A stretch of DNA of 46,575 nt. Source: Octopus sinensis (Eukaryota). The notes below the pieces were generated by a model. It did not search any database. It was given only the letters and a program-made list of their open reading frames with translations, and was not told where the DNA came from. The position numbers were made by a program, and so were the translations under genes. The stretch lies in the NCBI RefSeq assembly GCF_006345805.1, contig NW_021834690.1:1-46575 (forward strand), written 5' to 3'. Shown in pieces: positions 1 through 44,706 of this stretch. Each line of letters opens with the position of its first letter. The stretch's first letter is position 1.

Positions 1-688
1 TACAGGTTGTAGTGAGGGTGGTGATATTGATGGCGGTGGTGTATGGGTATTGGTAATGATAAGGGTGGAGGCGGTGATGGTTAGAGTGCTTTCAAACAAC
101 GACTTTAAATCACGGAATGTTAGAGAAAGAGAGAGAGAGAGAGTGTGTGTGTTTGTGTGCGTGTATATGTTTGTGTGTATATATGCTTGTGTATATATGT
201 GTGTATGTGAGCGAAATGATCAGCGAACAAGCGGGTGGAAAAGAAGGAAAGCGAGAACGAAAGAGAGCGTGACAGGTAGTCTGTTGCCGCCAAAACATCG
301 CATCCGACGTTTTGGCGGCGAGATTGGCCCTCAACCAACACTTCAACGCCAAACACGAAGGGTGTGCTGTCAGAACTAGGATGCGTGCTCTAAGGAACGA
401 AGGTGTTGGAGCCGCGAGAGAGGCCTGGGTGGCAGAGGCGCAACAGGGCAACAAATCCACCATTCGGGGTGCGCGAATTGCTCGAGCCAAGTAAAATGTG
501 TGAGTCCTTTCAACAGCATCTTGTCCGACTGTTCGGGACGAGTGGCGGGCAAGAACGTAGGGTGGACTTCAGTGCCTACCTACACAGCCTACCACGACTC
601 TCGACAAGAGAGGCAGTACGCTGCGAAGGTGCCATCACGGCGGCGGAAGTGCAGGACGCGATGGCAGAATGCTCAAGGGACAAATCGC

Positions 689-2055
689 GGATCTTTTCAT
701 TTGTGAAGCCAGCTTTTCCAAATTTTTCCTACTGAACCAAACAATTTGAAACTTCGTTTAACATTGTTTAATAATTAGAATTTTAACCAATGGTATTCCG
801 TCTTTCGGCTTCATATTATTTACTCCGTCTCGACCACCAATTTGGTGACGTAGTAAACATATGGTATGTAAACAAATGTAAACAAAACAATAACGATGAA
901 ATTTTTTACTCGGTGTATGTGTATATGTATGAATGTATGTATGTATGAATGTATGTATGTATGTGTGTATGTATCTATATATGTGTGTGTGTGTGTGTGT
1001 ATGTGTGTGTATGTGTGTGTATGTATGTATGTATGTATGTATGGCCGATTCGGTGATTAGTTTTTTCGAGTGAATACTCGGTGTATGTGTATCTGTATGT
1101 ATGTGTGTGCATGTGTGTGTGTGTGTATGTATCTATGTATGTGTGTGTGTGTGTATGTGTGTGTATGTATGTGTGTGTGTGTATGTATGTATGTATGGCC
1201 GATTCAGTGTTTAGTTTTTTCGAGTGAATACTCGGTGTATGTGTATCTGCATGTATGTGTGTGTGTGTGTGTGTATGTATCTATGTATGTATGTGTGTGT
1301 GTGTATGTATGTATGTATGGATCAAAACAGTTTGATTCAAATTCTGTGGTACTTATATATTCATACATACATATACATGTAGATGTATATAACATATATA
1401 TATATTGAATGTAAACATCTTTTATAAATATATATAATTCATGCATCTATAATACACACACATTATAAATATATACACATATATGCATATGCATTAGAAT
1501 ATGTGTGTATAGGTGTATATATATATATATATGCATATGTTTGTATACATGTGTGTGTGTGTGTATAAAAATAAATAATTTAACACTCATTTTATATATA
1601 CTCAGGATCTACACAAATTTTATATATACTCCACGAAGTTCAAAAGGTAAAAATCCGGTATTTTAAATTTTTGTTGCATTTCTAATCTTTCTGATGTCTA
1701 AGGATGGATATTTATGCGTATGAATCTTTTTCTTTTTATTTTGTTTCAAATATAATTCTAGGGAACTGAAAAACTCTGTACGATTACGATGAGCCAAGCC
1801 AATGTTTACATTTTGACAAAATTGCTTTCTACGTCACAGTTAACACTACGCAGATAAGTTCACATAAATACAGACAATACGATTGGCTAAAGTTCGCAGT
1901 TTTAATCTACGATTAAAGTCATAAAATAGATTTTTCTCAAATAAACTAGTTCCAAATTGTGTCTTGTTTTGAGACACTCTACGAGTACACGAAGTTTCAA
2001 ATTATTTAGTTAACTAGAAAGATCTGCGGTCCTGGCCACGATATTGAAAAGATCC
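689..2055. mobile_element. Non-autonomous TIR DNA transposon with 8-bp TSD, interior rich in microsatellites
   Basis: TIR GGATCTTTTCA (689-699) and TGAAAAGATCC (2045-2055). TSD CAAATCGC at 681-688 and 2056-2063. Removing it restores the LINE frame. Confidence 0.85.
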
Positions 2056-2068
2056 CAAATCGCCGGGT

Positions 2069-3454
2069 TTGGATGGTCTACCCTACAAGCTTTACAGTGG
2101 TATGCCAGACTTGTTTGGAGACGTCTTGGCAGCGGTGTACTGCAACTGGCAGCAAAACGGGAGCATTTCTGGTTTTGTGAGCCGAGGAGCCGTAACACTG
2201 CTGAAGAAAGATCTAAACAAGGGGAATGTAATAGATAACTTTAGGCCCATCACTCTGCTTAATGCAGACTTGAAAATTTTGGCCAAGGTGTTAGCCAAGA
2301 GGTTGGCGCTTGTCATCGAGAAACCGGTCGACAAGGCGCAAACGTGCGCCGTGCCGGGCCGGACCATCCATGACAACCTCCACCTGATGCGCTACATCAT
2401 AGACAGGGTAGTTAACGAACCTGGCATGGGTGGGGCGCTGATCAATTTGGATCAATCGAAAGCTTTCGATAGGGTAGACCATCGATACTTGGAGGCTGTC
2501 CTCAGAGCGGCTGGCTTTGCTCCCGTCTTCCGCGGTTGGATAGCCGCTTTGTACAGAGGCATCCGTCCGGTAATTCGCGTAAATGGACATCTATCGAGAC
2601 CTTTCGACATTGCACGTTCGGTTCGTCAGGGGTGCCCCCTCTCGTCGCTTCTATACGTATTGACTCTCGAGCCATTATTGCGGAAGCTGTCAACTCTGAG
2701 GGGCATCCCGCGAGAATTGGGATGCGGGACGAGCGTGTCTGCATACGCGGACGACGTCACCGTCATAGTGTCTAGCCACGAGCACATCGAGCAGGTCGGC
2801 GAGACATTAAAAAACTACGAAGCGGTGACAGGAGCGAAAATCAACCGGGAAAAGTCAGTGGGCTTGCGACTAGGCACCTGGAGAAGCAAGCCCATGCCGT
2901 CCACCAGCGCCTCCGTTGTGGGACGCTGGACCGACGGTCCGGACGAGTTGTTCGGGGTCTGGTTCGGTCCGGACCTCCAAATGGAGAAGAACTGGAACGA
3001 GATAACGAGTAGGGTGGTCACTCTCGCCCGGCAATGGGCCGAGAGGAAACTGTCCCTAAAAGGTCGGGCGGAGGTGGCGAACACGTACATCGCGTCCGTC
3101 ATCTACTACCGCCTGACCGTCGTACCTTGTCCCGACCCTACCATCATCAAACCAGAACGCATTCTCTTTCGCTTCTTGTGGAAAGGATGCGTCCCGATGG
3201 TCAGGCGATCCATTTGCTGTAAACACCCGTTAAAAGGAGGACTGGGCATGCCGTGGTTGATGATGCGCAGACACGCGCTGAGACTGCGACATCTCAGGCT
3301 CTATGTAGACGACGGTGAACAGGTGTGGTCGCCGTTTGTGAGGCACGCTTTCCCGCAGCTCGACTCCATGACCGAACTGCAGTCGTGGATCAAAAAGAGG
3401 TCGAGGAAGGGCGAATGGCACCGCGAGTGTCGCGTTGCTCTCAAGCAACTCTGA
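2069..3454 (+). CDS. LINE ORF2 reverse transcriptase domain (open fragment of a truncated element)
   Basis: Motifs DNFRPITLLNADLKILAK, LINLDQSKAFDRVDH, VRQGCPLS, YADD and YLG-like LFGVWF. Confidence 0.85.
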   Translation: MDGLPYKLYSGMPDLFGDVLAAVYCNWQQNGSISGFVSRGAVTLLKKDLNKGNVIDNFRPITLLNADLKILAKVLAKRLALVIEKPVDKAQTCAVPGRTIHDNLHLMRYIIDRVVNEPGMGGALINLDQSKAFDRVDHRYLEAVLRAAGFAPVFRGWIAALYRGIRPVIRVNGHLSRPFDIARSVRQGCPLSSLLYVLTLEPLLRKLSTLRGIPRELGCGTSVSAYADDVTVIVSSHEHIEQVGETLKNYEAVTGAKINREKSVGLRLGTWRSKPMPSTSASVVGRWTDGPDELFGVWFGPDLQMEKNWNEITSRVVTLARQWAERKLSLKGRAEVANTYIASVIYYRLTVVPCPDPTIIKPERILFRFLWKGCVPMVRRSICCKHPLKGGLGMPWLMMRRHALRLRHLRLYVDDGEQVWSPFVRHAFPQLDSMTELQSWIKKRSRKGEWHRECRVALKQL

Positions 3455-4127
3455 CGTCCCGGGTCGACATTGAGTGACTCCATCACAACCCAAACATTCT
3501 ATAGGGGATTAGTGGAGGAGAGATACGACGACGAGCTCGAGGCGAACCTGGACGTCGACGAGGAATACCTGACCCGCCTGTTCGGGACGACTTTCGGGCC
3601 AGGGCCCATGGACAACTTCCAGAGATCCCTGGCCTGGCAGTACTACCGAGAAGCACTACCCGTTCGGGATAAGCTCTACAGATACGGCTCGAGAAACGGG
3701 GCCGACCTGCCCGAGATGCGGTCAGAGCGACGAAATCGTTCTGCACGCAATCGTGCAGTGTCCAACAATTTCCGACCTGTGGGCTTACGTCGAACAACTG
3801 CTGTCACGTGTGGGACGAGTCGGTTTATCAGCTGAGTCTATCGTCAATATTGTCACGCCTCCTTCATTCAAACGGGAAGGAAGAGCTATTTTTATCATCC
3901 TTGTGGCTATGGCGAAATAATGTATCTGGTGGACGCGTCTGAAAGGATTGGAGACAAACACTTTCCTCTCTGGTCAACCTCTCATCAACTTCTTCAAGTA
4001 CCACTTGAAAAGGAAAGTGAGAGTAGAGAGGCAAGTTTTGTCTAGCGAATGTTTTAAAAAAAGAAGGGTGAATGTAGCAAGGATGGCACGTATGAATGAC
4101 GAAGCCACCTTGAGCATAATCCTATGA
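3455..4127 (+). pseudogene. Frameshifted ORF2 C-terminus with CCHC zinc finger
   Basis: Frames join to give YREALPVRDKLYRYG..PTCPRCGQSDEIVLHAIVQC; a stop and frameshifts are present. Confidence 0.8.
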
Positions 4128-4503
4128 ACCCAGAAATTGAAAACAGAGGGTTACCCACTTGCAAACAAATGTGGTAACATATAACAATATTGACCGAGGT
4201 TACCGTGGTCTTTTTCGTAGGCTTTTCTTCCCACGGATAAACCTTATCTGCTTCCCCCTTTACACCGTACATCATGACACTGTGATACACGATCCCTATT
4301 GATCGTTTTTTCCTCTTCCCTTTTTTTCTTCTTTTTTCTTTTTTTCTTTTCTTTTGTTTCTTTTCCTTTTTTCTTTTTTCCCTTTTACGATCCCTTTTGA
4401 TCGAAAACCTACGCCATTTTTTTTTTCATCCCCCAAAAGAAAAGCTCTACCTTGTAATTTGTCCTGTCTGTGTGCAGCCCTGTGTGGCTAGTAAAGAAAC
4501 ATA

Positions 4504-4504
4504 A

Positions 4505-4603
<99 letters not shown>

Positions 4604-4614
4604 ACTATCTATCT
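4504..4614 (+). repeat. (TATC)n tract between LINE copies B and C
   Basis: About 27 near-perfect CTAT units. Confidence 0.95.
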
Positions 4615-7600
4615 CTCTGGACAGACAGACGCAAGTCAAATGGGCTCCCAGTAAGTTGGTCATTTTATACGTCCAAAAGTATTTATTGTTAATTATTTTG
4701 TATTTAAAAGTTGTGCAACAACATCCGCTGCAAACTTTGACTAATATCCACACAAAATTTCGCCCTTTGTGGGCAAAATTTTTAAAATTCTCGTAAGCCT
4801 CGTGTTGTATTTTAGCCATTTTTATTTTCAAAAATGGCTACTGGTCACCACGAGGCGGAGGCGCAACTGAAGCATGACGCCAAAACAATAAAACAGGGTG
4901 CCCTGTCATCATGCGCAGAACTTGACTGTGTAAACATTACTTACACCACCACCATCAGCATCGACAACAGCAACAAATACAAAACAAAGGTCGCAAGGCC
5001 AAGCACCGACATCGCCACCAGTGATTCCACCACCATAGCAGCATCTGCTACTACAACTGCTATCGACACCGCTACCAATAACAATACCAACATCACCATC
5101 ACCGCCACCAAAGACCGTGCCGTCAATGCCTCCCTTGCTACCACCGCCGTCACCAAGAACGGCAATAACAACAACAATTCTCTTCAGCCACTGCTCACTC
5201 CATCACCAACAAGTGAAGTGAGGTAAAAATAACAACGACAATCAAACGAAGCGCCGAAATTTGCGCTAATGCAGGTCCAAATTACGCAGACAATTTTCCA
5301 CTCCTTGCTAGTTGCATAATCATCAACCACAAACCTAATACACCCACAACCCACACCCCTGCCATCAACACCACCGGCAGTAACAACAATAACAAAACAA
5401 CAACAAACTTCGCCGAGGCGATAAAAGAAAAAATGACAAAAGTATCTTTTACTGTACAGCAAATAAAAGACTGCAGAGCCCTAATCACGGAAGAAAACGG
5501 CAAAATACACTTACACATACCACAACACATACTGAATGAGGAAAAAAAGAAAACGGTTATTTATAAAATAACAAACAAAACAACTAAAAGTCCAGAAAAG
5601 GCAAGCACGGACAAAATAGAAAAGTGCCTACGCCCCATCTTGGGATACAAGGATTATGTGACTTGGGCGAACAAGTTCGCCCACGTACAGCTGGTTTTTC
5701 AGAATGAAGAATTGGCTAAGAAATTCTCAACGATAACCCTTCATTCTGATGAACTAACGATGACACCAAGTTACCTTGGCCAGAAGGTGACGAAGGTCAA
5801 TATCAATAATGTCCCCCAAGAAACAAACACACTATGGATAACATCCGCCATAACATCCGAAATGGAGGACTTAAACATCCTGGATATCGCTGTTTCGAAA
5901 CACAAGGACTGGCTGGGAAAGAGAATGGAGTTCCTCTTCCACATAAGCCAAGACGACATTAACAGAATTCCCACCCACGTACATCTTGCGGATGGCCGCA
6001 AGTTGTACGTAGTAGTTGAGGGCAGAAGGCCACGCTGCTATACATGTGGCAGTGAGGCACACCTCAAAAAGGAGTGCAAATCTGCCGCTAAATCACAACA
6101 ACAACAACAGCCACAGGAAAAACCACAAAAGCCAGCATTATTGCCCACACCACAATATGGACGGCTAGTCAAGTAGCTGTATGCAGAAATGCATGAAAAA
6201 CAACAAAGAACAGGCCAACCCAACCAAACAACACCAACACCAGCGCCAAGAACAGAATCATCACCACCAACAACAACTAAACCAATTCCAACACCGAGAA
6301 TGACAACGAAGAAGACAAGCACCAAGGATGTAGGAGAGACAACCACCACACCAAACCCCCCAGCAACACCCTCCACGCGCACCACAACAATATCTACAAC
6401 CGCACAAACAGACCCAGACGCTTTACCCTTACCCCCTGCTGATTCGTCAGACTTTTCATCTAACGATGAAAGTTCGACAGAATGGCAAATAGCCACCGGG
6501 GGTAAAAGAAAAAGATCAAAAAAGACCAAACAAGAAAACGCAACCAAAGCAGGGAGATACCTGAACCCTGAAAACCCCATACACAACCAAACAAGCACCA
6601 ACACCACAAAAACACACACAATGCTATCAGCGATAGACACAAAAGACTCCAAACTAATGGAGTACATCACAGCCCACACAAACATCTGTGAAGATGACTT
6701 CAAAACTAACAACCATCCACACACTACACCACCCAAACACATCAAAATACTACACATCACACAGACAGAACACCACACACTCAAAGCCCTCTTTCCAAAT
6801 GCTGTGGGGGGTTTCCAAAAATATCTATCTCAAAACCTCTACAAAAACATCCTCCAAGACACATCAAAGAACGAGGAAGCGGTGCTACCGAGAAGCGCTA
6901 CCCGTTCGGGATAAGCTCTACAGATACGGCTCGAGAAACGGGGCCGACCTGCCCGAGATGCGGTCAGAGCGACGAAATCGTTCTGCACGCAATCGTGCAG
7001 TGTCCAACAATTCCCGACCTGTGGGCTTACGTCGAACAACTGCTGTCACGTGTGGGACGAGTCGGTTTATCAGCTGAGTCTATCATTAATATCGTCACGC
7101 CTCCTTCCTTCAAACGGGAAGGAAGAGCTATTTTTATCATACTTGTGGCCATGGCGAAAGAATGTATCTGGTGGACGCGCCTGAAAGGATTAGAGACAAA
7201 CACTTTCCTCTCTGGTCAATCTCTCATCAACTTCCTCAAGTATCACTTGAAGAGGAAAGTGAGAGTAGAGAGGCAAGTTTTGTTTAGTGAATGTTTTAAA
7301 AAAAGATGGGTGAATGTAGCAAGGATGTTACGTATGAATGACGAAGCCACCTTGACTATGATTCTATGAACCGTGAAAATTAATAAAAAAGAAATATAAC
7401 ATGTGACTTCATTGACCGAGGTTACCGTGGTCTTTTCCGTAGGCTTTTCTTTCCACGGGTAAACCTCACCTGTCCTCCCCTTTACACTTCATATTGACAT
7501 TTCTGTGATAACGATCCCTATTGATCAATTTTTCCTCTCCCTTTTTTAATTTTTTAAAAATCCCCCCTATTTTGTCCTCTTTCTTTCCTTTTACGATCCC

Positions 7601-7706
7601 TTTTGATCGACCCCCCCTTTTTTTACCTCCAAAAGAAAAGCTCTACCTTGTAATTTGTTCTATCTGTGTGCAGCCCTGTGTGGCTAATAAAGAAACATAT
7701 CTATCT
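4615..7706 (+). mobile_element. Internally deleted Tx1-like element (copy C): 5' UTR, ORF1, last ~0.5 kb of ORF2, 3' UTR
   Basis: ORF1 homologous to copy D joins at about 6880 directly to the ORF2 CCHC region. It ends in GCCCTGTGTGGCTAATAAAGAAACATATCTATCT like the other copies. Confidence 0.85.
4834..6880 (+). pseudogene. ORF1 (gag-like) with CCHC zinc knuckle, disrupted
   Basis: RCYTCGSEAHLKKEC (CX2CX4HX4C) with Thr/Asn-rich and Pro/Thr-rich linkers. Frameshift between 5226 and 5433; in-frame TAG at 6174-6176. Confidence 0.8.
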
Positions 7707-9811: not shown

Positions 9812-12800
9812 ATGTCAAGTATGCTCAAATTAGGTTGTGTGAATGCGCGTGGCTTGGCGTCGGCTTGGAAGCAAGGTTACTTTCTAAACGACATCAAGTC
9901 ACTGAACGTGGATATAGTAGCTATCAGTGAAACCAGACTCAGTAAGCCGCGGGCCCTCGAGTCCATGTTTGGCAATCAATTTGACATTTATTTTTCTCCC
10001 TGTCTGCCGAACATGGGTGGTGGAGGTACCGCGGTGCTTTTTCGAAAGAGTCTAAATGTAAAAGTAAGAGCTATATTCCTAGACCCAAAATGTGTGTGCA
10101 TCCCGTCTGATGGCAGTTTATGCACCGTCCTTAACGGGTCGGGCGGATTTCTTCAGACGTCTAGAGGTTTTCCTGGGTACGTCTAGACCTTTACTGTTAG
10201 TAGGGGATTGGAACGCTACCTTAGACACGCATCTAGATTATGTGGGAAGGGATAGGAATAGAAGGGGGTGTGAGAGCCTCAAAGACCTGCTCAGACGTTT
10301 CCATTTGTCTGACAGGTTCCGACTCGACCATCCGAACGTGCCAACGTGGACTTGGACAAACCGCGTCGGATCGTCGAGATCTTATCTAGATAGAATTCTA
10401 TGCAGGACAGCGGATAGGGATAGTGTAGGATGTCCACAATTTAAAATAGTCAGCTACACAGATCACAAATTTGTTACGTGTACGCTCGACTTAGATAAAA
10501 CACATAGGCAGGGTCCCGGTTACTGGAAACTGAACACGTCGCTGTTAGCGCGACAGATTTACAGGAACCGGATTAGCGAGTTAATTAAGAGGGCGCTGAC
10601 GGGAGCCGTCGTTAACAACCGCTGGTGGTACGCCCTGAAAATGGCAATAAAATCGGAATCAATTAGGTTTAGCACGGAATTAGCGATAGAACGAAATAGA
10701 GTAGAGGGAGACTTGGTTAAGAAACTAGAAGAGGCACTTACCACTGGCAGCGCAACCAACGTGCTGGCTGCGAGGATGGCCCTCGACCAACACCTCAACG
10801 CCAAGCACGAAGGTTGCGTCGTCAGAGCTAAAATGCGTGCCTTAAGGAAGGAAGGGATCGAAGCTGCTCGAGAGGCCCGGGTAGCGGAGGCGCAGCGTGG
10901 CAACAGAGCCACATTTCGGTCTCTAATAGATCAACAGGGATGCAGTTTACTCGAACCCGAAAGGATGTGTGAGGCCTTTCAACAGCACTTTGCTCGACTG
11001 TTTGGTGCGAGTGGTGGGTCGGAACGCGGGATGGATTTCAGTGCCTACCTGACCGACCTGCCGCGGCTCTCGGCAAGAGAAGCGGAGTGTTGTGAAAGTC
11101 CCACCACAGCTGCTGACGTGTGGGATGCGATGGCGGGCTGCGCGGGGGATAAGTCGCCTGGATTGGATGGTTTACCCTACGAGCTGTATTGTCAAATGCC
11201 AGACTTGTTTGGCGACCTCTTGGCATCAGTCTACTGCAACTGGCAACAAAACGGGAGAATCCCCGGTTTCGTGAGCCGAGGTGCAGTGACGTTGCTGAAG
11301 AAAGTCCCAAACAAGGGGAATTTTATAGATAATTTCAGGCCCATCACTCTGCTCAACGCAGATTTGAAAATTTTGGCCAAAGTAATAGGCGAGAGGTTGG
11401 CGCTTGTCATTGGTAAACTGGTCGACAGGGCACAAACATGCGCCGTGCCGGTCAGAACCGTACATGACAACCTCCATCTGATGCGCTACATTGTGGACAG
11501 GGTAGTTAAGGATCCTGGCATGGGTGGGGCGCTGATAAATTTGGATCAGTCTAAAGCCTTCGATAGGGTCGACCATCGGTACTTGGCGGCCGTCCTCAGG
11601 GCGGCTGGCTTCGGTCCCGTCTTCCGCGGTTGGATCGCTGCCTTGTATAGCGGCATCCGATCGGTGATTCGGGTGAACGGTCACCTGTCGAAATCGTTTG
11701 ATATCACGCGTTCGGTCCGTCAGGGGTGTCCCCTGTCGGCGCTTCTGTATGTATTGACTCTCGAGCCGCTACTGCGGAAGCTGGCGACACTGAGGGGCAT
11801 CCCACGGGAACTGGGTTGCGGGACGATGTCACCGTCATAGTGTCGAGCGACAAACACATCCAGATGATAGGCGAGACACTAAGAAAATACGAAACGGTGA
11901 CGAGAGCAAAGATTAACCCGGAAAAGTCAGTGGGTTTGCTACTCGGCACCTGGAGAAGCAAGCCCATGCCGTCCGACTGCGGATCAGTAGTGGGACGCTG
12001 GACGGACGGACCGGTTAAATTGCTCGGGGTCTGGTTCAGTCCGGACCTCCAAATGGATAAGAACTGGGACAAGATCACGAGTAGAGTGGTCGCTCTCAGC
12101 CAAGCATGGGCCGAGAGAAAGTTGTCTCTAAAAGGCCGGGCGGAGGTGACAAACGCGTACATCGCATCCGTCATCGATTACCGCCTGACCGTCGTACCTT
12201 GTCCCGACGCCACCATCACCAAATTGGAACCCACACTCTTCCGCTTCAAGTGGAAGGGTGACGTTCCGATGGTGAGGAAGTCCATTTGCTGTCAACATCC
12301 GTTGAATGGAGGACTGGGCATGCCGTGGTTGATGATGCGCAGGCATGAGCTGAGACTGCGACATCTCTGGAACTTCATCGACGACGGTGAACAGGTGTGG
12401 GCGCCGTTTGTGAGGCGCGACTTCTCGCAGCTCGTCTCACTGACCGAACTGCAAACGTGGATCAAAAAGAGACCGAAACTGGGCGATTGGCACCGAGAGT
12501 GTCGCCAAGCTCTACAGCAGCTCTGCCGACCGGGGTCAAACTTGTGCAACTTACAAACGACTAAAGCGTTCTATTGAGGCTAGTGGAGGGGAGGTCCGAC
12601 GACACACTCGGGGCAAACCTGGGCGTCGACGAGAATTCCTAACCCGCCTGTTCAGGACGACGTTCGGGCCGGGGCCTATGGATAACTTCCAGAAATCCCT
12701 GGCTTGGCAGTGCTATCGAGACGCACTACCTGTTCGAGAGAAGAGCTACAGACACGGTTCGAAAACCATCACCGGACCGACCTGCCCGAGATTCGGTCAG

Positions 12801-13202
12801 AGCGACGAAACCGTTCTGCACGCACTCGTGTAGTGTCTAGATATTTCAGAGCTGTGGTCCTTCGTCGAACAGCTGTTGTCACGTGTAGGTCGGGCTCGCC
12901 TATCGGCCGAGTCTATCGTGAATATTGTTCCACCACCTTCCTTTAAACGGGAAGGGAAAACGGTTTTTGTTACGCTGATGGCTATGGCAAAAGAATGTGT
13001 GTGGTGGACGCGTTTGAAAGGACTGCAAACAAACACCTTCCTCTCTGGTCAGTCTCTCGTCAACTTTTTCAAGTACCACTTGAAAAGGAGGATGAGAATA
13101 GAGAGGAAGGCTTCGTCGACCGAATGTTTTAATAAAAAGTGGGTAAAAGTGGCAAAAATGGTCAGTATGAAAGACGACACTATTTTAAGCATAAATCTGT
13201 AA
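9812..13202 (+). pseudogene. ORF2: APE endonuclease, RT and CCHC, inactivated
   Basis: APE motifs CVNARGL, AISETRL, AVYAP, VGDWN, SYLDRI, YTDH. RT motifs DKSPGLDG, SKAFDRV, QGCPLS. YADD is deleted at about 11826; several frameshifts and stops. Confidence 0.9.
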
Positions 13203-13321
13203 CCAAAAAGACAACGAGAAGTAAGGCGACTTACTCATGTGTTCTTTTTCGAATGTCTGAGGTGACCTTGGTCTTTTTTGTAGGTTTTTCTTTCCAAGGC
13301 TACACCTGAACTGTGAACCTT

Positions 13322-13370
<49 letters not shown>

Positions 13371-13509
13371 TTATATAGAGGGCATTATACATACATGCCA
13401 GAAGGCATTATACATACATGCACACGCTAAGAGGGACAATTAGTCATTTCTACCAAAAATATTACTAATCCCACCGAATGCATTTTTCAAGTAAGACATT
13501 TAAAAATAT

Positions 13510-13557
13510 AGACCTGTATCACAGTGATTTCATACTTACGTATTCATCAGCAGGCCT
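13510..13557 (-). ncRNA. Type I hammerhead ribozyme (inverted copy)
   Basis: Reverse complement is identical to the two plus-strand copies: AGGCCUG CUGAUGA AUAC-GUAA-GUAU GAAA UCA-CUG-UGA UA CAGGUCU. Confidence 0.88.
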
Positions 13558-14214
13558 GATGCATTAAATAAACGACCCTGCCCCGCTTAAGCCGATCAGC
13601 TAACTGATCAATCAACGAAGCACATGGGTGAGTTTACATATATTACATCCGGATAAATGGCAAACTTTTACACGAATTCCATTTCGGGAGAGAAAAGTTT
13701 TTTCGGAATAAAATTTAGCAATTAAGGACAACTACTTAATAAGGAAAACTTAACAAGAATTGTCAGGTAGATAGCGTGAAAACCTCATACAGGTCTATAT
13801 TTTTTAAATGTCTTACTTTGAAAAATTGCATTCGGTGGATTAGTAATATTTTTGTAGAAATGACTAATTGTCCCTCTTAGCGTGTGGCATGTATGTATAA
13901 TGCCTTCTGGCATGTATGTATAATGCTCTATAATATATAATATGTTCAATAAGAATAATTATTTTCGAAATTTTTTCTCTTATGAGGTTTTCACGCTATC
14001 TACCTGACAATTTCTTGTTAAGTTTTCCTTATTAGTAGTTGTCCTTAATTGCTAAATTTTTATTCCGAAAAAACTTTTCTCTCCCGAAATGGATTCGTAA
14101 AAGTTTGCCATTTATCCGGATGTAAATATGTAAACTCACCCATGTGCTTCGTTGATGTTGATCAGTTAGCTGATCGGCTTAAGCGGGGCAGGGTCGTTTA
14201 TTTATAATGCATTC

Positions 14215-14262
14215 AGGCCTGCTGATGAATACGTAAGTATGAAATCACTGTGATACAGGTCT
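14215..14262 (+). ncRNA. Type I hammerhead ribozyme, predicted cleavage after AUA (14255/14256)
   Basis: Stem I AGGCCUG/CAGGUCU (7 bp, one G-U); core CUGAUGA at 14222-14228; stem II AUAC/GUAU with GUAA loop; GAAA at 14241-14244; stem III AUCA/UGAU with CUG loop. Confidence 0.9.
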
Positions 14263-14678
14263 ATATTTTTTAAATGTCTTACTTTGAAAAATTGCATTCG
14301 GTGGGATTAGTAATATTTTGGTAGAAATGACTAATTGTCCCTCTTAGCGTGTGGCATGTATGTATTGCCTTCTGGCATGTATGTATAATGCCCTCATATA
14401 TAATAATATGTTCAATAAGATATTATTTTCGAAATTTTCTCTTATGAGGTTTTCACACGCTACTACCTGACAATTTCTTGTTAAGTTTTCCTTATTAGTA
14501 GTTGTCCTTTTGCTAAATTTTTATTCCGAAAAAACTTTTCTCTCCCGAAATGGAATTCGAAAAGTTTGCCATTTATCCGGATGTAATATATGTAAACTCA
14601 CCCATGTGCTTCGTTGATGTTATCAGTTAGTAGCTGCTCGGCTTAAGCGGGGCAGGGTCGTTTATTTATAATGCATTC

Positions 14679-14726
14679 AGGCCTGCTGATGAATACGTAA
14701 GTATGAAATCACTGTGATACAGGTCT
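14679..14726 (+). ncRNA. Type I hammerhead ribozyme, predicted cleavage after 14719
   Basis: Identical 48-nt sequence to 14215-14262. Confidence 0.9.
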
Positions 14727-14988
14727 ATATTTTTTAAATGTCTTACTTTGAAAAATTGCATTCGGTGGGATTAGTAATATTTTTGTAGAATGACTATTGT
14801 CCCTCTTAAGCTGTGGCATGTATGTATATAATGCCTTCTGGCATGTATGTATAATGCCCTCTATATATAAATTAATAGGTTCAATAAGAATAATTATTTT
14901 CGAAATTTTTTCTCTTATGAGGTTTTCACGCTATCTACCTGACAATTTCTTGTTAAGTTTTCCTTATTAATTAGTTGTCCTTAATTGC

Positions 14989-15033
<45 letters not shown>

Positions 15034-15399
15034 TTTTTTTATACACCACACAACCCACAGATCCCTATTGATCAAACGTTTTTTTTTTGTGCCCCCCCAT
15101 CCACCTCGAAAAGAAAAAATTCTACATTGTATTTCGTCCATTTTTATTCTGTGTTTAGCCCTGTGTGGCTACAATAAAAAGTTATCTATCTATCTATCTA
15201 GCTATCTGACAGTCTATACATACATACATACATACATACATACATACATACATACAGACGGGGCTACGTGGTAAGAAGCTTGCCTCACTACCACATGATT
15301 TTGGGTTCAGTAAGCTAGATTGCTCTAACTGGGACCTCCTGGACTTGATATTGTACGTGCTTACCTCTAAGGATAGCGTGACTCGGTGGCAGAATTATG

Positions 15400-19714: not shown

Positions 19715-20195
19715 AGGCGTGTCTTGCTTCCCAACTACATGATTCCGGGTTCAGTCCCACAGTGTGGCACCTAAAGCAAGTGTCGTCAACTATAGCTTCT
19801 GGCCGACCAAAACTTTGTGAGTGGACTTGGTAGACGGAAACTGAAAGAAGCCCATCGTATGTGTGTGCATACACACACACAACACACACACACACACACA
19901 TACACACACACACACACATTATATATATATATATACACACACACATATGTATGTATATATGTATGTATGTGTGTATGTATGTATCATGTATGTATGTGTC
20001 TGTGTTTGTCCCTCACCACCGCTTGACAACCGATGTTGGTTTGTTTACGTCTTCGTAAAGTAACGGTTCGACAAAATGCGTCCGATGAAATAAGTGACAA
20101 GCTTTTTAAAAAATGAGTACTGGGGTCGATTAGTTCGTCTAAAATTCTTCAGGACAGATACCCCAGCATGGCCACAATCTAATAAAAAGATAAAA
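19715..20195 (+). mobile_element. SINE family 1 copy
   Basis: Same head, body and tail motifs as 17533-17920. Confidence 0.8.
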
Positions 20196-20202
20196 GAATC
20201 TT

Positions 20203-20668
<466 letters not shown>

Positions 20669-20764
20669 TACATAGTTTCCCATCTCTTAAAATATAGAAC
20701 TATAAAAGAATGTTATTTGAATGAACACAACTTTGATACTCCATCGTCATATTTATTTTATTCT

Positions 20765-25070: not shown

Positions 25071-26058
25071 GCAGTAGGACAGTGGTGGTATGACTCACAG
25101 TGCAGTAAGACAGTGGTGGTATGACTCACAGTGCAGTAGGACAGTGGTGGTATGACTCACAGTGCAGTAGGACATTGGTGGTATGACTCACAGTGCAGTA
25201 AGACAGTGGTGGTATGACTCACAGTGCAGTAAGACAGTGGTGGTATGACTCACAGTGCAGTAAGACAGTGGTGGTATGACTCACAGTGCAGTAAGACAGT
25301 GGTGGTATGACTCACAGTGCAGTAAGACAGTGGTGGTATGGCTCACAGTGCAGTAAGACAGTGGTGGTATGACTCACAGTGCAGTAAGACAGTGGTGGTA
25401 TGACTCACAGTGCAGTAAGGCAGTGGTGGTATGACTCACAGTGCAGTAAGACAGTGGTAGTATGACTCACAGGGCAGTAAGATAGTGGTGGTATGACTCA
25501 CAGAGCAGTAGGACAGTGGTAGTATGACTCACAGGGCAGTAGGACAGTGGTGGTATGACTCACAGGGCAGTAAGACAGTGGTGGTATGACTCACAGAGCA
25601 GTAGGACAGTGGTAGTATGACTCACAGGGCAGTAAGATAGTGGTGGTATGACTCACAGTGCAGTAGGACAGTGGTGGTATGACTCACAGGGCAGTAAGAT
25701 AGTGGTGGTATGACTCACAGAGCAGTAGGACAGTGGTAGTATGACTCACAGGGCAGTAAGACAGTGGTGGTATGACTCACAGTGCAGTAGGACAGTGGTG
25801 GTATGACTCACAGGACAGTAGGACAGTGGTGGTATGACTCACAGTGCAGTAGGACAGTGGTGGTGTGACTCACAACGCAGTAGGTCAGTGGTAGTATGAC
25901 TCACAGGACAGTCGGATAGTGGTGGTATGACTCACAGCGCAGTAGGACAGTGGTGGTATGACTCACAGAGCAGTAGGACAGTGGTGGTATGACTCACAGC
26001 GCAGTAGGACATGGTGGTGTGACTCACAACGCAGTAGGACTGGTAGTATGATTCACAG
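25071..26058 (+). repeat. 31-bp minisatellite, about 32 units
   Basis: Consensus ACAGTGGTGGTATGACTCACAGTGCAGTAAG; period 31 (for example 25081 and 25112). Confidence 0.95.
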
Positions 26059-26067
26059 GGCACGCAT

Positions 26068-31716: not shown

Positions 31717-33175
31717 TTGGATCATCCTATATGTAATGCGGTTTTTTATACTTCTTTTATTTTTCAAAATTAAGATAAAGTTCTTTTTTAATCTTAAATA
31801 TACCATAAATCCTCAAGTATAATCCGCATTTTCCCCCAAAATTTAAAGATCAAAATCCCTAGTGCGTACTATTTACGAGGTTTAAAATGAAAAATATTTT
31901 CTAAGCAATGACCGAGTCTACTTGCTGTCCGGCAATGTTTATTCAGACACAATTTGTGATGTCGGGCGCGAAAATACCTTAAGCTAAGCCTGAAAGCAAT
32001 GAAGTCAATAAAGAATCATCCATAACTTGCAGTAAGCAACATTTATTAAAATAAAATTATTCAGAACACAGAATAACATGTAGGAAAAACAATTTGCAAA
32101 CATATTTACATTCCCATATAACAGTTAAAAACATCACCATTATTGCATAACGCATGCGTGGAAGTGTTTGTTCGACTAGATGCTGCTGGCTTAATTACGC
32201 ACGACTTAAGTTAGAGAAGGAGTGCGTATTATACACAAGGTTTAGATTTTTCAGAAGTACAGTCCCCTAAAAATCCCCTGCGTATTATACTCAAGGGCGG
32301 ACTATACTCGAGGATTTACGGTACTCTGTTTCATTCCCTACAATGCTCTTCGGTCTAGTTGGTAGACTTGCAAGGCCCCTCTTCCAAAATTCACTTGTCT
32401 GTGACGAAAAATACTCCTCCAGTACTGTTCTGACATTCTCTTCAAAATTCATATTTTTTCCATCCAAATAGTTTTGAAGACTTCGGAATAAATGATAATC
32501 AGCTGGGGCAATGTCCGGCAAATATGGTGGGTGGGGCATCGTTTCCCATTCAAACTGCTCCAGCTTTTGGAATGTCATCCTCGCTGTGTGTGGCTGAGCA
32601 TTAACCAAAGATGGTCGTTTTTTCTTATAGCGCTGACTTAAGCCACTCAAGCTGCTTTGTTATTGTTATTGTTTGGTTTGGGTTTAAAAGTTCAAAGTGG
32701 ACTACAACACCTTAAGTGGGTGAAGACCTTCTTTAGCCTAAGGTGCCGGTGTTTCTCCTTTCCCTACCAACTGTCTTCGGCGCTTGACATTTTTATAGAG
32801 AACTCATTTCTCGTCACTACTCACCATTCAGTCCAAAACAGGTTTATTCTTGAGACGTTACAGCAAAGGAGAGAGAGCACGCGTTCACTTTCTGCGTGCG
32901 AGTAGACACAATTTGCTGACTTTTCCGATGGCACGCTGGTGTCGGTGAATGGTTGAATGCCGAAATCCAAGCTTCCCTTGTAGATCCCCATCAGTTACGA
33001 TGAGATTTTGTTCCACTAGGTTTTGTAGGATGTCCTCGTCGAGCTCTACAGATCTTCCAGGACGAGGCTCGTCTCCTAGGTTGTAGTTTCCGGTTCGGAA
33101 TTTCTGGAACCATCGTTGACACTGGCTTACGCTTATTATCCGATCCACATATATTGCATTAATATATATTATCAG
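31717..33175 (-). mobile_element. Decayed mariner transposon with nested MITE
   Basis: HTH region QCQRWFQKFRTGNYNLGDEPRPGRS, SDEK and PHPPYLPDIAPADYHLFRSLQN. Mariner-type TIR TTGGATCATCCTATATGTAATGCGGTTTTT after TA at 31715-31716. Confidence 0.85.
31803..32321. mobile_element. Tc1/mariner-superfamily MITE with TA TSD
   Basis: TIRs CCATAAATCCTCAAGTATAATCCGC and GCGGACTATACTCGAGGATTTACGG. TA at 31801-31802 and 32322-32323. Confidence 0.85.
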
Positions 33176-33224
33176 CCATTGAAAAGAACAACCTCGGATT
33201 TTACCACGCCCTACACACACACAC

Positions 33225-33302
<78 letters not shown>

Positions 33303-33809
33303 GTAAATGAGTGGACAAATGAAAAGGAAGGCACTCAACACATTTAGTTGTAGTTGCATGTATAATCTAAAACAATTTGATTCGGTTCCATGCAACTTAA
33401 ATTTTCGCAGGCTTCTTACGGCAACCTAGTTCATTCATAAATAACAATATACATACAGACATATAAATATAACAAAAATGCGTACGAAGAAAATCACATC
33501 GTTAATTGTAGAATTCACCTCACGAAGCCAATAATCGTTTCTGTTGTATTAACATATTTAGATACAGACAATATGATTGAAATTAATATTTCCGAAAATA
33601 TAGCATTTTCAAGGCAAATCAAAATTACTAGATATATTATTAATAGTTATCGCCAAGCTAACATGGCAGTCCAGGGAAATAGGACGAATGCTACCGTTGA
33701 TTAGCTCCAAGAATCCATCGCCTCTAGCTAGCTATGTGACACACAAACCTGTGTCCATTATAACCTTCGAACAGGGGAGGTCAGCAGCTTCCCCTTGCTG
33801 GTTCGGCAC

Positions 33810-37904: not shown

Positions 37905-38860
37905 AGGCACGAAATTTTTGGGGAGGTGGAGGCAGTCGATTAAATCAACCCCAGTACGCAACCGGTTCTTGATTTATCGACCACTAAAGGATGAAAGGCA
38001 AAGTTTACCTCGGCGGAATTTGAACTCAGAACGTAGTTGGCAGATGAAATACCTATTTCTTTACTACCCACAAGGGGCTAAACACAGAAGGGACAAACAA
38101 GGACAGACAAACGGATTAAGTCGATTATATCGACCCCAGTGTGTAACTGGTACATATTTAATCGACCTCGAAAGGATGAAAGGAAATGTCGACTTTGGCG
38201 GAATTTGAACTCAGAACGTAGCGGCAGATGAAATGCCTATTTCTATTTCTTTACTACCCACAGAGAGAACAACAAGAACAGATAAACGGATTAAGTCGAT
38301 CATATCGACCCCAGTGCGTAACTGGTACTTATTTAATCGACCCCGAAGGATGAAAGGCAAAGTCGACCTCGGCGGAATTTGAACTTAGAACGTAGTGGCA
38401 GATTAAATAAGTACCAGTTACGCACTGGGGTCGATATAATCGACTTAATCCGTTTGTTTGTCTTTGCTTATCCTCTCTGTATTTAGTCCCTTGTGGGTAG
38501 TAAAGAAATGGTTATTTCGTTCTGAGTTCAAATCCGCTGGAGTCGACTTTGCCTTTCATCCTTTAGTGGTCGATAAATTAAGTACCAGTTACGCACTGGG
38601 GTCGATGTTATCGACTTAATACCTTTGTCTGTCCTTGTTTGTCCCCTCTCTGTTTAGCTCCTTGTGGGGAATAAAGAAATAAGAATCGTTAGCACGCCGG
38701 GAAAAATGCTTTGCGTCATTTCGTCCGTCTTTACGCTCTGAGTTCAAATGTCACCGAGGTCGATGGAAATCCATTCTGGTTGGTAAAATAGGTACCAGTT
38801 GAATACTGGGGTCGATATAATCGACTTACTCCTCCCTCCGAAATTGCTGGCCTTGTGCAT
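37905..38860. mobile_element. Cluster of about 6 SINE family 2 bodies: three minus-strand then three plus-strand
   Basis: Repeated ~180-bp bodies with an orientation switch near 38403. Confidence 0.8.
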
Positions 38861-43662: not shown

Positions 43663-44283
43663 TGAGTGCTTACCGTTAGAACATGGAGTTTGAAGAAATT
43701 AAACGGGAAATAGAAGACCCAACGGACAGACAAAACTCTCAGTGGGAAAGATGGATGGACGATAGCATCGTGTTTGAGACGGGAAGTGAGTCAACAAGAG
43801 CGTCTTAAAGAAGGAAAGACCGAGTCATTATAAAGCACTAGAAATAAAGTGGAATTTTTTTAAAACGTAAAATATAAGAAATAATAGTTGTAATTGAAGA
43901 AGCCGAGACAAAGGGTGACAGGAAAGGCAGTTGAGATAAAAATGAATATTTTTCAAAATTATAAGAAGAGATTGTTTGAAGTGCCGGATGCAGAGAGAAG
44001 CTGAAAGTTTTGGAGTGATGTATGAACAAGAAAAGTTATCCAGAACGAAGAGACAAAGTGAATAGAAGTAGATGAGCTGAGACCAGTAAAACAATGTAAT
44101 AATTACTTCGAAGCTCATTACGAAACGAGTTTCAAAATTACGTAATTGAGACGCATCCGTGCCCGCAAACATTCTAGTTGAAGGGAATTAAAACGCCCAG
44201 AGAATATCTAAGTTATTAAATGTGAAAAAGTGTGTGTGCGTGTGTATGTGTGTGTTTTTTGGGGGATATATTATCCGGGCGGA

Positions 44284-44706
44284 TACCTATTTCTTTACTA
44301 CCCACAAGGGGACAAACATAGAGTGGACAAACAAGGACAGACAAGGGGATTAAAGTCGATTACATCGACCCCAGTGCGTAACTGGTACTTAATTTATCGA
44401 CCCCGAAAGGATGAAAGACAAAGTCGACCTCGGCGGAATTTGAACTCACAACGTAACGGCAGACGAAATACCTATTTCTTTACTACCCACAAGGGGCCAA
44501 ACACAGAAGGGACAAACAAGGACAGACAAACGGATTAAGTCGATTATATCGACCCCAGTGCGTAACTGGTACTTATTTAATCGATCCCGAAAGGATGAAA
44601 GGCAAAGTCGACCTCGGTGGAATTTGAACTCAGAACGTAGCGGCGGGCGAAATACCACAAAGCATTTCGCCCGGCGTGCTAACGATTCTGCCAGCTTGCC
44701 GCCTTA
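44284..44706 (-). mobile_element. SINE family 2 with one head and a tandemly duplicated body
   Basis: Head at about 44640-44706; bodies at about 44284-44468 and 44469-44650. Confidence 0.85.

What the first reader, a model, noticed from the sequence alone, without database searches (positions are those of the whole stretch)
13366..14992. Retrozyme-like tandem array: ~465-nt non-coding unit with a perfect type I hammerhead in every complete copy
Seen: a ~465-bp unit occurs as one inverted partial copy and about 2.6 direct copies. It carries AGGCCUG CUGAUGA AUAC-GUAA-GUAU GAAA UCA-CUG-UGA UA/CAGGUCU, with all core nucleotides, three paired stems, a GNRA loop and an AUA site. This 48-mer is identical in the three copies, while the rest of the units differ by indels. 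Known: tandem hammerhead-bearing non-coding repeats (newt satellite 2, schistosome SM-alpha, metazoan non-LTR retrozymes) are cut into monomers that can circularise. Inference: this is an octopus-type retrozyme making a ~465-nt linear or circular RNA. It has a full stem III, unlike the minimal PLE hammerheads elsewhere in the window, so it should cleave as a monomer. I cannot tell whether the family is already catalogued.
Basis: partly seen in the sequence, partly recalled or inferred. Interest (0 to 1): 0.93.

Follow-up and report, generated by a model that had tools for sequence, protein, structure and literature searches.

The report
Hammerhead-ribozyme tandem repeat inserted in a LINE
A 465-base non-coding repeat carrying a self-cutting "hammerhead" RNA motif sits as one inverted plus 2.6 tandem copies inside another mobile element; it looks like a new member of the known animal "retrozyme" class, not a new kind of thing.

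Summary
A 464-466-nt unit forms 2.6 head-to-tail copies (13790-14993), preceded by one inverted, 5'-truncated copy (13378-13789). An identical 48-nt type I hammerhead motif occurs three times. A motif this good was never seen in 400 random windows. Three corrections apply. (1) No Rfam hammerhead model matches it, even at E<=10; it has an atypical A10.1-U11.1 pair. (2) Its identity across copies is not evidence of selection (P=0.31); copies differ by 0-1.2% substitutions plus many small indels. (3) Stem III is marginal (-0.2 kcal/mol), and a two-ribozyme dimer is predicted to be much more stable, so "cleaves as a monomer" is doubtful. New findings: the composite interrupts the 3'UTR of a LINE and is bounded by (TA)n on both sides. 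The direct array begins, within 3 nt, at the predicted cleavage site. The layout (inverted truncated copy, tandem copies, (TA)n target) is the published insertion signature of Penelope-like elements. The circular monomer folds far better than shuffles (z about -5). Best reading: a metazoan non-LTR retrozyme mobilised by Penelope-type machinery. Catalysis, circular RNA, dispersed copies and host species could not be tested here.

The parts
13321..13377 (.). (TA)n microsatellite, left flank; presumed half of the split target
   Evidence: TRF period 2, 29 copies. It mirrors the right-flank (AT)n (I15).
13378..13789 (-). Inverted, 5'-truncated copy of the unit (412 nt). In its own orientation it runs from unit position ~192 (TATGAGG) through the hammerhead to unit position ~140-150, then meets (TA)n.
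   Evidence: Alignment of copies; blastn of the unit against the window, 95.7% identity; 0 substitutions against the direct copies.
13510..13557 (-). Hammerhead motif of the inverted copy; predicted cleavage between 13517 and 13516 on the minus strand
   Evidence: Exact 48-mer match; descriptor hit with helices 7/4/4 bp.
13787..13789 (.). ATA microhomology at the junction between the inverted copy and the direct array
   Evidence: Read directly. ATA belongs either to rc(TATGAGG) or to the ...GAUA end of the hammerhead. Neither copy can extend further.
13790..14255 (+). Monomer 1 (466 nt), starting at C1.1, the first base after the predicted cleavage site
14215..14262 (+). Hammerhead 1: AGGCCUG / CUGAUGA / AUAC-GUAA-GUAU / GAAA / (A)UCA-CUG-UGA(U) / A | CAGGUCU; predicted cleavage between 14255 and 14256
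   Evidence: helices I and II form in the minimum-energy fold.
14256..14719 (+). Monomer 2 (464 nt)
   Evidence: 3 substitutions and 16 gap events against monomer 1.
14679..14726 (+). Hammerhead 2; predicted cleavage between 14719 and 14720
14720..14993 (+). Partial monomer 3 (274 nt), ending at ...TTGCTAAAT next to (AT)n
14992..15031 (.). (AT)n microsatellite, right flank; presumed other half of the split target
   Evidence: TRF period 2, 20 copies, 100% matches.
9812..13320 (+). Host LINE copy B: ORF2 (AP-endonuclease plus reverse transcriptase, stop at 13202) and the proximal 3'UTR up to the (TA)n
   Evidence: Pfam Exo_endo_phos and RVT_1; alignment with LINE copy A.
15032..15205 (+). Distal 3'UTR and 3' end of the same LINE (GATCCCTATTGATCAA ... 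AGCCCTGTGTGGCTA ... AATAAA ... (TATC)n), resuming after the insertion
   Evidence: Joined flanks align with the copy A 3'UTR at 7370-7706.

Best explanation
This is a genomic copy of a non-autonomous, non-coding retroelement of the metazoan non-LTR retrozyme kind.

Shown by the sequence:
- A 465-nt AT-rich unit with one complete type I hammerhead per unit.
- Arrangement as an inverted 5'-truncated copy plus 2.6 tandem copies.
- Insertion into a (TA)n tract inside the 3'UTR of a LINE, in the sense orientation of that LINE.

Inferred mechanism:
- A multimeric transcript, possibly read through from the LINE, is cut by the hammerhead after ...GAUA, between A17 and C1.1. Cutting probably works best when two neighbouring ribozymes pair through their near-palindromic helix III/loop 3.
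- A reverse transcriptase of a Penelope-like element, primed at both nicks of a (TA)n target, copies the RNA. One cDNA ran for 2.6 units and stopped at the RNA 5' end made by self-cleavage. The other gave the inverted truncated copy.
- The two cDNAs were joined at a 3-nt microhomology.
For: Repeat anatomy.

Hammerhead: every core position and three helices are present, and a match this good was never seen by chance (0 of 400 random windows; 0.0075 per window at the looser 5/3/2 level).

Non-coding: the longest ORF is 57 aa, and a concatenated six-frame query found no protein relative. GC is 33%.

RNA structure: the circular monomers fold at -114.9 and -120.3 kcal/mol against -88 and -91.5 for dinucleotide shuffles (z = -5.1 and -5.7). 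Hammerhead helices I and II are formed and the core is not blocked. The opposite polarity gives only -75.6 (z = -2.1).

Mobility: the composite splits an otherwise collinear LINE 3'UTR.

Integration signature: an inverted 5'-truncated copy next to partial tandem copies, with a (TA)n insertion bias, is the published hallmark of Penelope-like element insertions (PMC8557442). Retrozymes have been proposed, and in vertebrates shown phylogenetically, to derive from Penelope-like elements (PMC7229834; bioRxiv 10.64898/2026.07.22.740005).

Cleavage site: the direct array starts within 0-3 nt of the predicted site. Under a uniformly placed break this has a chance of about 4/465, or 0.9%.

Single event: the copies are nearly identical in substitutions, 0-1.2%.

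Penelope-type presence: a minimal Penelope-type hammerhead pair elsewhere in the window shows that such elements exist in this genome.
Against: No Rfam hammerhead model matches, even at E<=10 on a 91-nt slice.

The 10.1-11.1 pair is A-U, whereas G-C is described as highly conserved. The 15.2-16.2 pair is U-A.

Helix III is thermodynamically marginal, and a competing UGAU/AUCA pairing dominates the predicted ensemble of the isolated 48-mer.

Only one locus is visible. There are no other copies in the 46.6-kb window and none in the public collections that could be scanned, none of which is known to hold the source genome.

There are no expression or cleavage data. No Penelope reverse transcriptase or GIY-YIG ORF was found among the eight long ORFs scanned against Pfam; the three that matched a reverse transcriptase are LINE-type, one with an AP endonuclease.

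The 5:1 to 15:1 excess of indels over substitutions between copies suggests assembly noise, so fine details of the sequence may be unreliable.

The cleavage-site junction is a single observation.
Confidence: 0.72

Rival explanations
1. An ordinary local tandem or inverted duplication (small satellite-like repeat) whose unit happens to contain a hammerhead-like string. No self-cleavage occurs and there is no RNA-mediated life cycle.
For: Rfam finds no hammerhead. The A10.1-U11.1 pair is atypical. Helix III is marginal and a misfold is favoured. Conservation within the array is uninformative. No second locus was found.
Against: A complete core with 7/4/4-bp helices was never seen in 400 random windows. 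By my scaling from that simulation, about 3 would be expected per 2.8-Gb genome. It would also have to fall by chance in a 465-nt tandem unit, on the strand with the strongly non-random fold (z about -5), with the array starting at its predicted cleavage site, and in a composite that is plainly an insertion into a LINE 3'UTR.
Confidence: 0.13
2. These are the terminal (pseudo-LTR) parts of a heavily truncated or internally deleted autonomous Penelope-like element, not an independent retrozyme family.
For: The architecture (tandem plus inverted 5'-truncated copy, (TA)n target) is that of Penelope-like insertions. Hammerheads sit in their pseudo-LTRs. Retrozymes and pseudo-LTRs are related in Xenopus.
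Against: The period is 464-466 nt through 2.6 units with no ORF remnant. A truncated autonomous element would repeat with a period of kilobases. Animal Penelope hammerheads are described as minimal, with long helix II, a bulged base and no helix III, unlike this one. In practice an internally deleted derivative that amplifies as a 465-nt unit is what the 2026 preprint calls a retrozyme, so this is more a nuance than a true rival.
Confidence: 0.1
3. A retrozyme-like element that was mobilised by a LINE (twin priming, as in L1 5' inversions) rather than by a Penelope-like element.
For: Twin priming also yields inverted-plus-direct structures. LINEs with intact-looking reverse transcriptase domains are abundant in the window. 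The NAR 2020 paper leaves LINEs open as mobilisers.
Against: The unit shares no sequence with the LINE 3' ends in the window. It lacks their AATAAA...(TATC)n tail. Tandem multimers and a (TA)n target are Penelope-like traits.
Confidence: 0.04
4. An assembly artefact, such as a chimeric palindromic long read or a collapsed or expanded repeat.
For: The indel-to-substitution ratio of 5-15:1 between copies points to long-read noise. Penelope-type tandem/inverted structures are known to trouble assemblies.
Against: The inverted arm and the direct array do not meet at mirror-image positions (unit position ~192 against position 1), unlike a missed-adapter palindrome. Both flanks continue the same LINE 3'UTR in the same orientation.
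Confidence: 0.03

Closest known systems
Metazoan non-LTR retrozymes (coral Acropora, mussel Mytilus, axolotl; Cervera & de la Pena 2020, PMC7229834)
   Same: Short head-to-tail non-coding repeats with one type I hammerhead per unit. GC is below 50%. There are no LTR, PBS or PPT features. The predicted circle is stable and highly self-paired, with the hammerhead left free. Like the mussel family, it lacks the archetypal loop1-loop2 nucleotides.
   Different: At 465 nt the unit is at or above the quoted 150-450-bp range, though within the 51-972 bp of the 2026 preprint. The hammerhead has A10.1-U11.1, a GUAA loop 2 and a 4-bp helix III with a 3-nt loop. No expression, cleavage or copy-number data exist. 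None of the papers searched or checked here describes a cephalopod or related example.
Penelope-like element insertions (Craig et al. 2021, PMC8557442)
   Same: Partial tandem copies, an adjacent inverted 5'-truncated copy at the 5' side, insertion into a (TA)n microsatellite that obscures target-site duplications, and a hammerhead in the repeated part.
   Different: There is no reverse transcriptase or GIY-YIG ORF. The period is 465 nt rather than about 3 kb. No 30-40-bp tail is recognisable. The hammerhead is not of the minimal Penelope type.
Newt satellite 2, Schistosoma SM-alpha and cave-cricket pDo500 hammerhead repeats
   Same: Tandem non-coding repeats that carry type I hammerheads. A weak helix III means a double-hammerhead dimer is the likely active form.
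   Different: Those are large, high-copy families with G10.1-C11.1 and are the kind of sequence the Rfam type I model recognises. Here only 2.6+1 copies are seen and Rfam does not match.
Minimal Penelope-type hammerheads (Cervera & de la Pena 2014, PMC4209133); one example lies in this window at 20568-20613
   Same: Type I topology, a CUGANGA...GAAA core, and a predicted need for dimerisation.
   Different: The minimal form has a 6-8-bp helix II with a bulged base, a 4-5-bp helix I and no helix III. The array motif has 7/4/4-bp helices and no bulge.

Membership tests
Metazoan non-LTR retrozyme | Type I hammerhead with a complete catalytic core (C3-A9, G12-A14, A15.1-U16.1, H17) and helices I-III, once per unit | tested here: met
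   Descriptor hits at 14215-14262, 14679-14726 and 13510-13557 with helices of 7/4/4 bp. No equally good match in 400 random windows.
Metazoan non-LTR retrozyme | [quoted passage not shown] | tested here: met
   Period 464, 2.6 copies; monomers of 466 and 464 nt.
Metazoan non-LTR retrozyme | Non-coding; no LTR, PBS or PPT; GC below 50% | tested here: met
   ORFs of at most 57 aa. No protein relatives for any frame. GC 33%. The non-coding and GC parts were computed; no LTR-type layout is visible in the copy alignment, but PBS and PPT were not specifically searched.
Metazoan non-LTR retrozyme | Monomeric circular RNA predicted to be stable and highly self-paired, with the hammerhead not blocked | tested here: met
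   Circular minimum free energy of -114.9 and -120.3 kcal/mol, z = -5.1 and -5.7, 64-67% of bases paired, helices I and II formed. Minus polarity gives z = -2.1.
Metazoan non-LTR retrozyme | Self-cleavage of transcripts and accumulation of linear and circular monomers in tissues | not testable with these tools
   No RNA data are available. The only indirect hint is that the array 5' end coincides with the predicted cleavage site.
Metazoan non-LTR retrozyme | Multi-copy family dispersed in the genome | not testable with these tools
   No other copy in the window. No hits in viral, metagenome, prokaryote-genome or protein collections. None of these collections is known to contain the source genome.
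Metazoan non-LTR retrozyme | Co-occurrence with Penelope-like elements in the same genome | tested here: inconclusive
   No Penelope-type RT or GIY-YIG ORF among the eight long ORFs scanned against Pfam. However, an inverted pair of about 159-nt fragments with a minimal Penelope-type hammerhead lies at 20193-20678. Penelope-like elements are reported in Octopus vulgaris (PMC13282606), if the host is an octopus.
Penelope-like-element-type insertion | Partial tandem copies with an adjacent inverted 5'-truncated copy at the 5' side | tested here: met
   Inverted copy 13378-13789, truncated at unit position ~192, abuts the direct array 13790-14993. Feature as described in PMC8557442.
Penelope-like-element-type insertion | Insertion bias for microsatellites, notably (TA)n | tested here: met
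   (TA)29 at 13321-13377 and (AT)20 at 14992-15031 bound the composite, inside a LINE 3'UTR.
Penelope-like-element-type insertion | 30-40-bp extension (tail) at one end | tested here: not met
   Both ends pass directly from unit sequence (UAAAU[U]) into (AT)n. The feature is described as frequent, not obligatory.
Rfam hammerhead families (Hammerhead_1 RF00163 and relatives) | Score at or above the family gathering threshold | tested here: not met
   No hammerhead match at gathering score, nor at E<=10 on 1.8 kb or 91 nt.
Canonical metazoan type I hammerhead | G10.1-C11.1 pair and conserved loop1-loop2 tertiary-contact nucleotides | tested here: not met
   The sequence shows A10.1-U11.1. Loop 2 is GUAA, and helix I (7 bp) is followed by an unpaired AUAUUUUU rather than a recognisable loop 1. 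Conservation is stated in PMC4209133. Mussel retrozyme hammerheads also lack the contacts yet cleave.

The most novel reading that the evidence does not exclude
The locus may be a nearly undecayed record of a single retrozyme integration. It shows cDNA synthesis primed from both sides of a (TA)n target, one cDNA running off exactly at the ribozyme's self-cleavage site after 2.6 rounds, and an inverted truncated partner. That would be direct structural evidence that non-LTR retrozymes are integrated by Penelope-type machinery from a hammerhead-processed template. It would also imply that a hammerhead variant with A10.1-U11.1, invisible to Rfam, is active in vivo, in an animal lineage where retrozymes have not been described.
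Probability: 0.35. Interest if true: 0.6.

Novelty: new member of a known kind. Interest (0 to 1): 0.42.

Why it matters
Retrozymes are a ribozyme-based route to abundant circular RNAs in animals. How they integrate is still argued mostly from co-occurrence with Penelope-like elements; a 2020 review states that the repeats show no motif that reveals their mobiliser (PMC7761336).

This single locus offers insertion-site anatomy that points to Penelope-type integration: an inverted copy plus tandem copies, a (TA)n target, and a 5' end at the cleavage site. It also adds a hammerhead variant that the standard covariance models miss, which suggests that such elements are under-counted in genome annotations.

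If the family proves single-copy or inactive, it is only a curiosity.

Tried and rejected
- **Rfam:** searched the whole window at gathering score, then 1.8 kb and 91 nt at E<=10. No hammerhead or other ribozyme family appeared, only noise from AT-rich miRNA and snoRNA models.
- **Exact-protein look-ups:** tried two spurious ORFs of the unit and a LINE ORF to locate the source contig or other copies. Nothing was on record.
- **Concatenated six-frame query:** searched a 1069-aa query made of all stop-free segments of the array against 5.8 billion proteins, hoping to catch miscalled ORFs on other copies. No hit.
- **Exact DNA scans:**
  - The hammerhead core pattern found nothing in viral contigs and one match in metagenomes (L001). 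That match has no helix I or III and is a chance hit.
  - Two other conserved unit segments found nothing in viral contigs, and one of them nothing in prokaryote genomes.
- **LINE C-terminus search:** intended to fetch empty-site 3'UTRs. It returned only two contigs under 1 kb from ENA metagenomes, without a usable 3'UTR.
- **Other copies in the window:** blastn with word size 7 found none.
- **tRNA or pol III-like parts:** ARAGORN found none.
- **Conservation argument from the three copies:** rejected, P=0.31.
- **Palindromic-read artefact:** rejected because the junction is not mirror-symmetric.
- **Literature:** none of the papers searched or checked describes a hammerhead or retrozyme in cephalopods.
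Full report
**1. What is there**

- Tandem Repeats Finder reports an array at 13787-14993 with period 464, 2.6 copies and 93% matches. It is flanked by (TA)29 at 13321-13377 and (AT)20 at 14992-15031.
None is expected in shuffles.
- Cutting at the predicted ribozyme site gives monomers 13790-14255 (466 nt) and 14256-14719 (464 nt), and a partial unit 14720-14993 (274 nt).
- The stretch 13378-13789 is a reverse-complement copy of 412 nt. In its own orientation it runs from unit position ~192 (TATGAGG) through the hammerhead to position ~140-150.
- No other fragment of the unit exists in the 46.6-kb window.

**2. Is the hammerhead real as a motif?**

- Read against the standard numbering, the RNA has all the required elements:
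  - helix I of 7 bp (AGGCCUG/CAGGUCU, with one G-U pair);
  - C3-A9 = CUGAUGA;
  - helix II of 4 bp (AUAC/GUAU) capped by GUAA;
  - G12-A14 = GAA;
  - A15.1-U16.1 closing a 4-bp helix III with a CUG loop;
  - H17 = A, giving an AUA|C cleavage site.
- My descriptor finds these three sites. The only other hit in the window is a single minimal, helix III-less motif at 20568-20613, found with a looser descriptor.
- In 400 random windows with the same dinucleotide statistics, motifs with helices of at least 5/3/2 bp occurred 0.0075 times per window (3 hits). Motifs as good as 7/4/4 bp never occurred.
- Scaling by base-pair probability (my inference) gives a few chance motifs of this quality per 2.8-Gb genome. 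One landing in a 465-nt tandem unit by accident is very unlikely.

**3. Why 'perfect' is too strong**

- No Rfam hammerhead family matches at gathering score, nor at E<=10 on 1.8 kb or on 91 nt.
- The 10.1-11.1 pair is A-U, whereas G10.1-C11.1 is described as highly conserved (PMC4209133). The 15.2-16.2 pair is U-A.
- No recognisable loop 1 faces the GUAA loop 2.
- The isolated 48-mer prefers a misfold in which UGAU of the core pairs with AUCA of helix III. That fold scores -12.1 kcal/mol against -9.7 for the catalytic fold, and helix III pair probability is about 3%.
- The helix III hairpin alone is worth -0.2 kcal/mol.
- AUCACUGUGAU is a near-palindrome. Two motifs are predicted to form the classic double hammerhead, with a 10-bp helix III and one U-U mismatch, at -31.1 kcal/mol against 2 x -12.1.
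- This is the behaviour described for most metazoan type I hammerheads (PMC7761336).
Activity as a dimer within multimeric transcripts is the better guess.

**4. Conservation within the array says nothing**

- Among the three copies that cover the ribozyme, the longest invariant run is 53 nt and includes the hammerhead. Random placement of the 30 variable events gives a mean longest run of 48.6 nt (P=0.31).
- The copies differ by only 0-1.2% substitutions but by 10-21 gap events per pair.
- Such an indel excess is not a normal mutational spectrum. It suggests long-read assembly noise or polymerase slippage in an AT-rich repeat.
- The copies are effectively identical, as expected if they arose in one event.

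**5. It is an insertion, and its layout is informative**

- Upstream lies a LINE (ORF2 with AP-endonuclease and reverse transcriptase domains, stop at 13202).
- Its 3'UTR aligns with that of a second copy (7370-7706) up to about 13320. It resumes at about 15057, after a short unaligned stretch that follows the (AT)n, and runs to the LINE's own end (AGCCCTGTGTGGCTA...AATAAA...(TATC)n at about 15205).
- The composite and its two (TA)n flanks therefore interrupt the LINE 3'UTR. The direct copies are in the LINE's sense orientation.
- The direct array begins at 13790, the first base after the predicted cleavage site. It is joined to the truncated end of the inverted copy through a 3-nt ATA microhomology, and neither copy can be extended further.
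- A break placed at random would fall in that 4-position window with a probability of about 0.9%.
- Both outer (3') ends leave the unit at a UAAAU(U) motif and pass into (AT)n (I15). With only two ends this is noted, not interpreted.

**6. Comparison with what is known**

- Metazoan non-LTR retrozymes are defined as tandem repeats of 150-450 bp with type I hammerheads, low GC, and no LTR, PBS or PPT. [quoted passage not shown] A 2026 survey found consensus lengths of 51-972 bp and mostly 7 or fewer units per array.
- This unit meets every sequence-level criterion:
  - GC is 33%.
  - ORFs are at most 57 aa, and a concatenated six-frame query found no protein relatives.
  - The circular fold has z = -5.1 and -5.7 on the ribozyme strand, against -2.1 on the other strand. 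Helices I and II are formed and the core is unblocked.
- Insertions of Penelope-like elements are characterised by partial tandems, an adjacent inverted 5'-truncated copy, and a microsatellite target bias that includes (TA)n (PMC8557442). That is the layout seen here.
- Retrozymes have been proposed to depend on Penelope-like elements. In Xenopus they are related to Penelope pseudo-LTRs.
- A 2020 review noted that the repeats themselves carry no motif that reveals the mobiliser. The insertion anatomy of this locus speaks to that point.
- The unit shares nothing with the LINE 3' ends nearby, which argues against LINE mobilisation by 3'-end mimicry.

**7. Most likely mechanism**

The anatomy above is shown. 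The following steps are inferred:
- A multimeric transcript is made.
- It self-cleaves after GAUA, probably through paired neighbouring ribozymes.
- Host ligase circularises the monomers.
- Reverse transcription is primed from both nicks of a (TA)n target.
- One cDNA covers 2.6 units and runs off at a hammerhead-generated 5' end. The template was either a linear multimer or a circle that re-cleaved.
- A second cDNA gives the inverted truncated copy.
- The two are joined by microhomology.

**8. What could not be done**

- No available tool reaches the source genome. Dispersed copies, covariation, the related autonomous element and the host species were not tested.
- The searches that failed to reach them are: exact-protein look-ups, the six-frame protein trick, DNA pattern scans of viral, metagenome and prokaryote collections, and a LINE-based route.
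- None of the papers searched or checked mentions a hammerhead or retrozyme in cephalopods.
- Penelope-like elements are annotated in Octopus vulgaris.

**9. Verdict**

- This is a real feature, correctly spotted. It is best classed as a new member of the known non-LTR retrozyme kind, with an atypical hammerhead that is probably dimer-dependent.
- Its main added value is the clean Penelope-type insertion signature and the array boundary at the predicted cleavage site.
- Confidence in the retrozyme reading is about 0.7. Whether the ribozyme is active is my own rough estimate of about 0.6.

Noticed in passing
window 20193-20351 and 20520-20678 (motif at 20568-20613, +): A 159-nt inverted repeat, 91% complementary, flanks an (AAT)n(GAT)n microsatellite. 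The right arm holds a minimal Penelope-type hammerhead-like motif: GACAC CUGAAGA A GGCUGG-loop-CCAGCC GAAA AG U U|GUGUU. The left-arm counterpart has CUGAUGA, but G12 is mutated to A. The arms also contain a tRNA T-arm-like GGTTCGAAAT. Rfam does not match it.
   Followed up: partly
window 9812-13320 and 15032-15205, compared with 6990-7706: Two diverged copies (about 75% identical) of an AP-endonuclease/RT LINE share a 3'UTR that ends in AGCCCTGTGTGGCTA..AATAAA..(TATC)n. The retrozyme array is nested in the 3'UTR of the second copy, in sense orientation. An active hammerhead there would cut off that LINE transcript's 3' end.
   Followed up: yes
window 403-7369: The first LINE region looks rearranged. 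An RT-bearing part (2069-3835) and a later ORF1-like part with a zinc knuckle (5433-6914) both run into the same C-terminal segment (...EALPVRDKLYRYGSRNGADLPEMRSERRNRSARNRAVSNN..., at 3470-3835 and 6688-7077). This suggests an internally deleted or nested element.
   Followed up: no
window 13790-14993 compared with 13378-13789: Copies differ by 0-1.2% substitutions but by 10-21 small indel events per pair. This suggests uncorrected long-read assembly errors or polymerase slippage. The frameshifts in neighbouring LINE ORFs (overlapping frames at 10092-11840 and 11726-12577) may have the same cause.
   Followed up: partly
window 37934-38409 and 44283-44656: 184-185-bp tandem units (2-2.7 copies, 81-91% matches) of a SINE-like sequence (AGTCGATTA[CT]ATCGACCCCAGTGCGTAACTGGTACTTA...GGAATTTGAACTCAGAAC). 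Related fragments appear elsewhere in the window as short ORF translations (for example ...[16 protein letters not shown]...).
   Followed up: no
window 25071-26062: A 31-bp minisatellite, 32 copies, 92% matches (GCAGTAGGACAGTGGTGGTATGACTCACAGT).
   Followed up: no
window 32291-33334 (-): ORF fragments that, by eye, resemble a mariner/Tc1-type transposase (...HPPYLPDIAPADYHLFRSLQNYL...). Pfam gave no hit for the 119-aa piece at E<=0.01.
   Followed up: partly
window 13376-13421, 13887-13932, 14814-14862: Inside each unit a 23-nt segment (GGCATGTATGTATAATGCC[TC]TC[T-]) is tandemly duplicated. The two copies pair with each other and form a long hairpin in the predicted circular RNA fold.
   Followed up: partly
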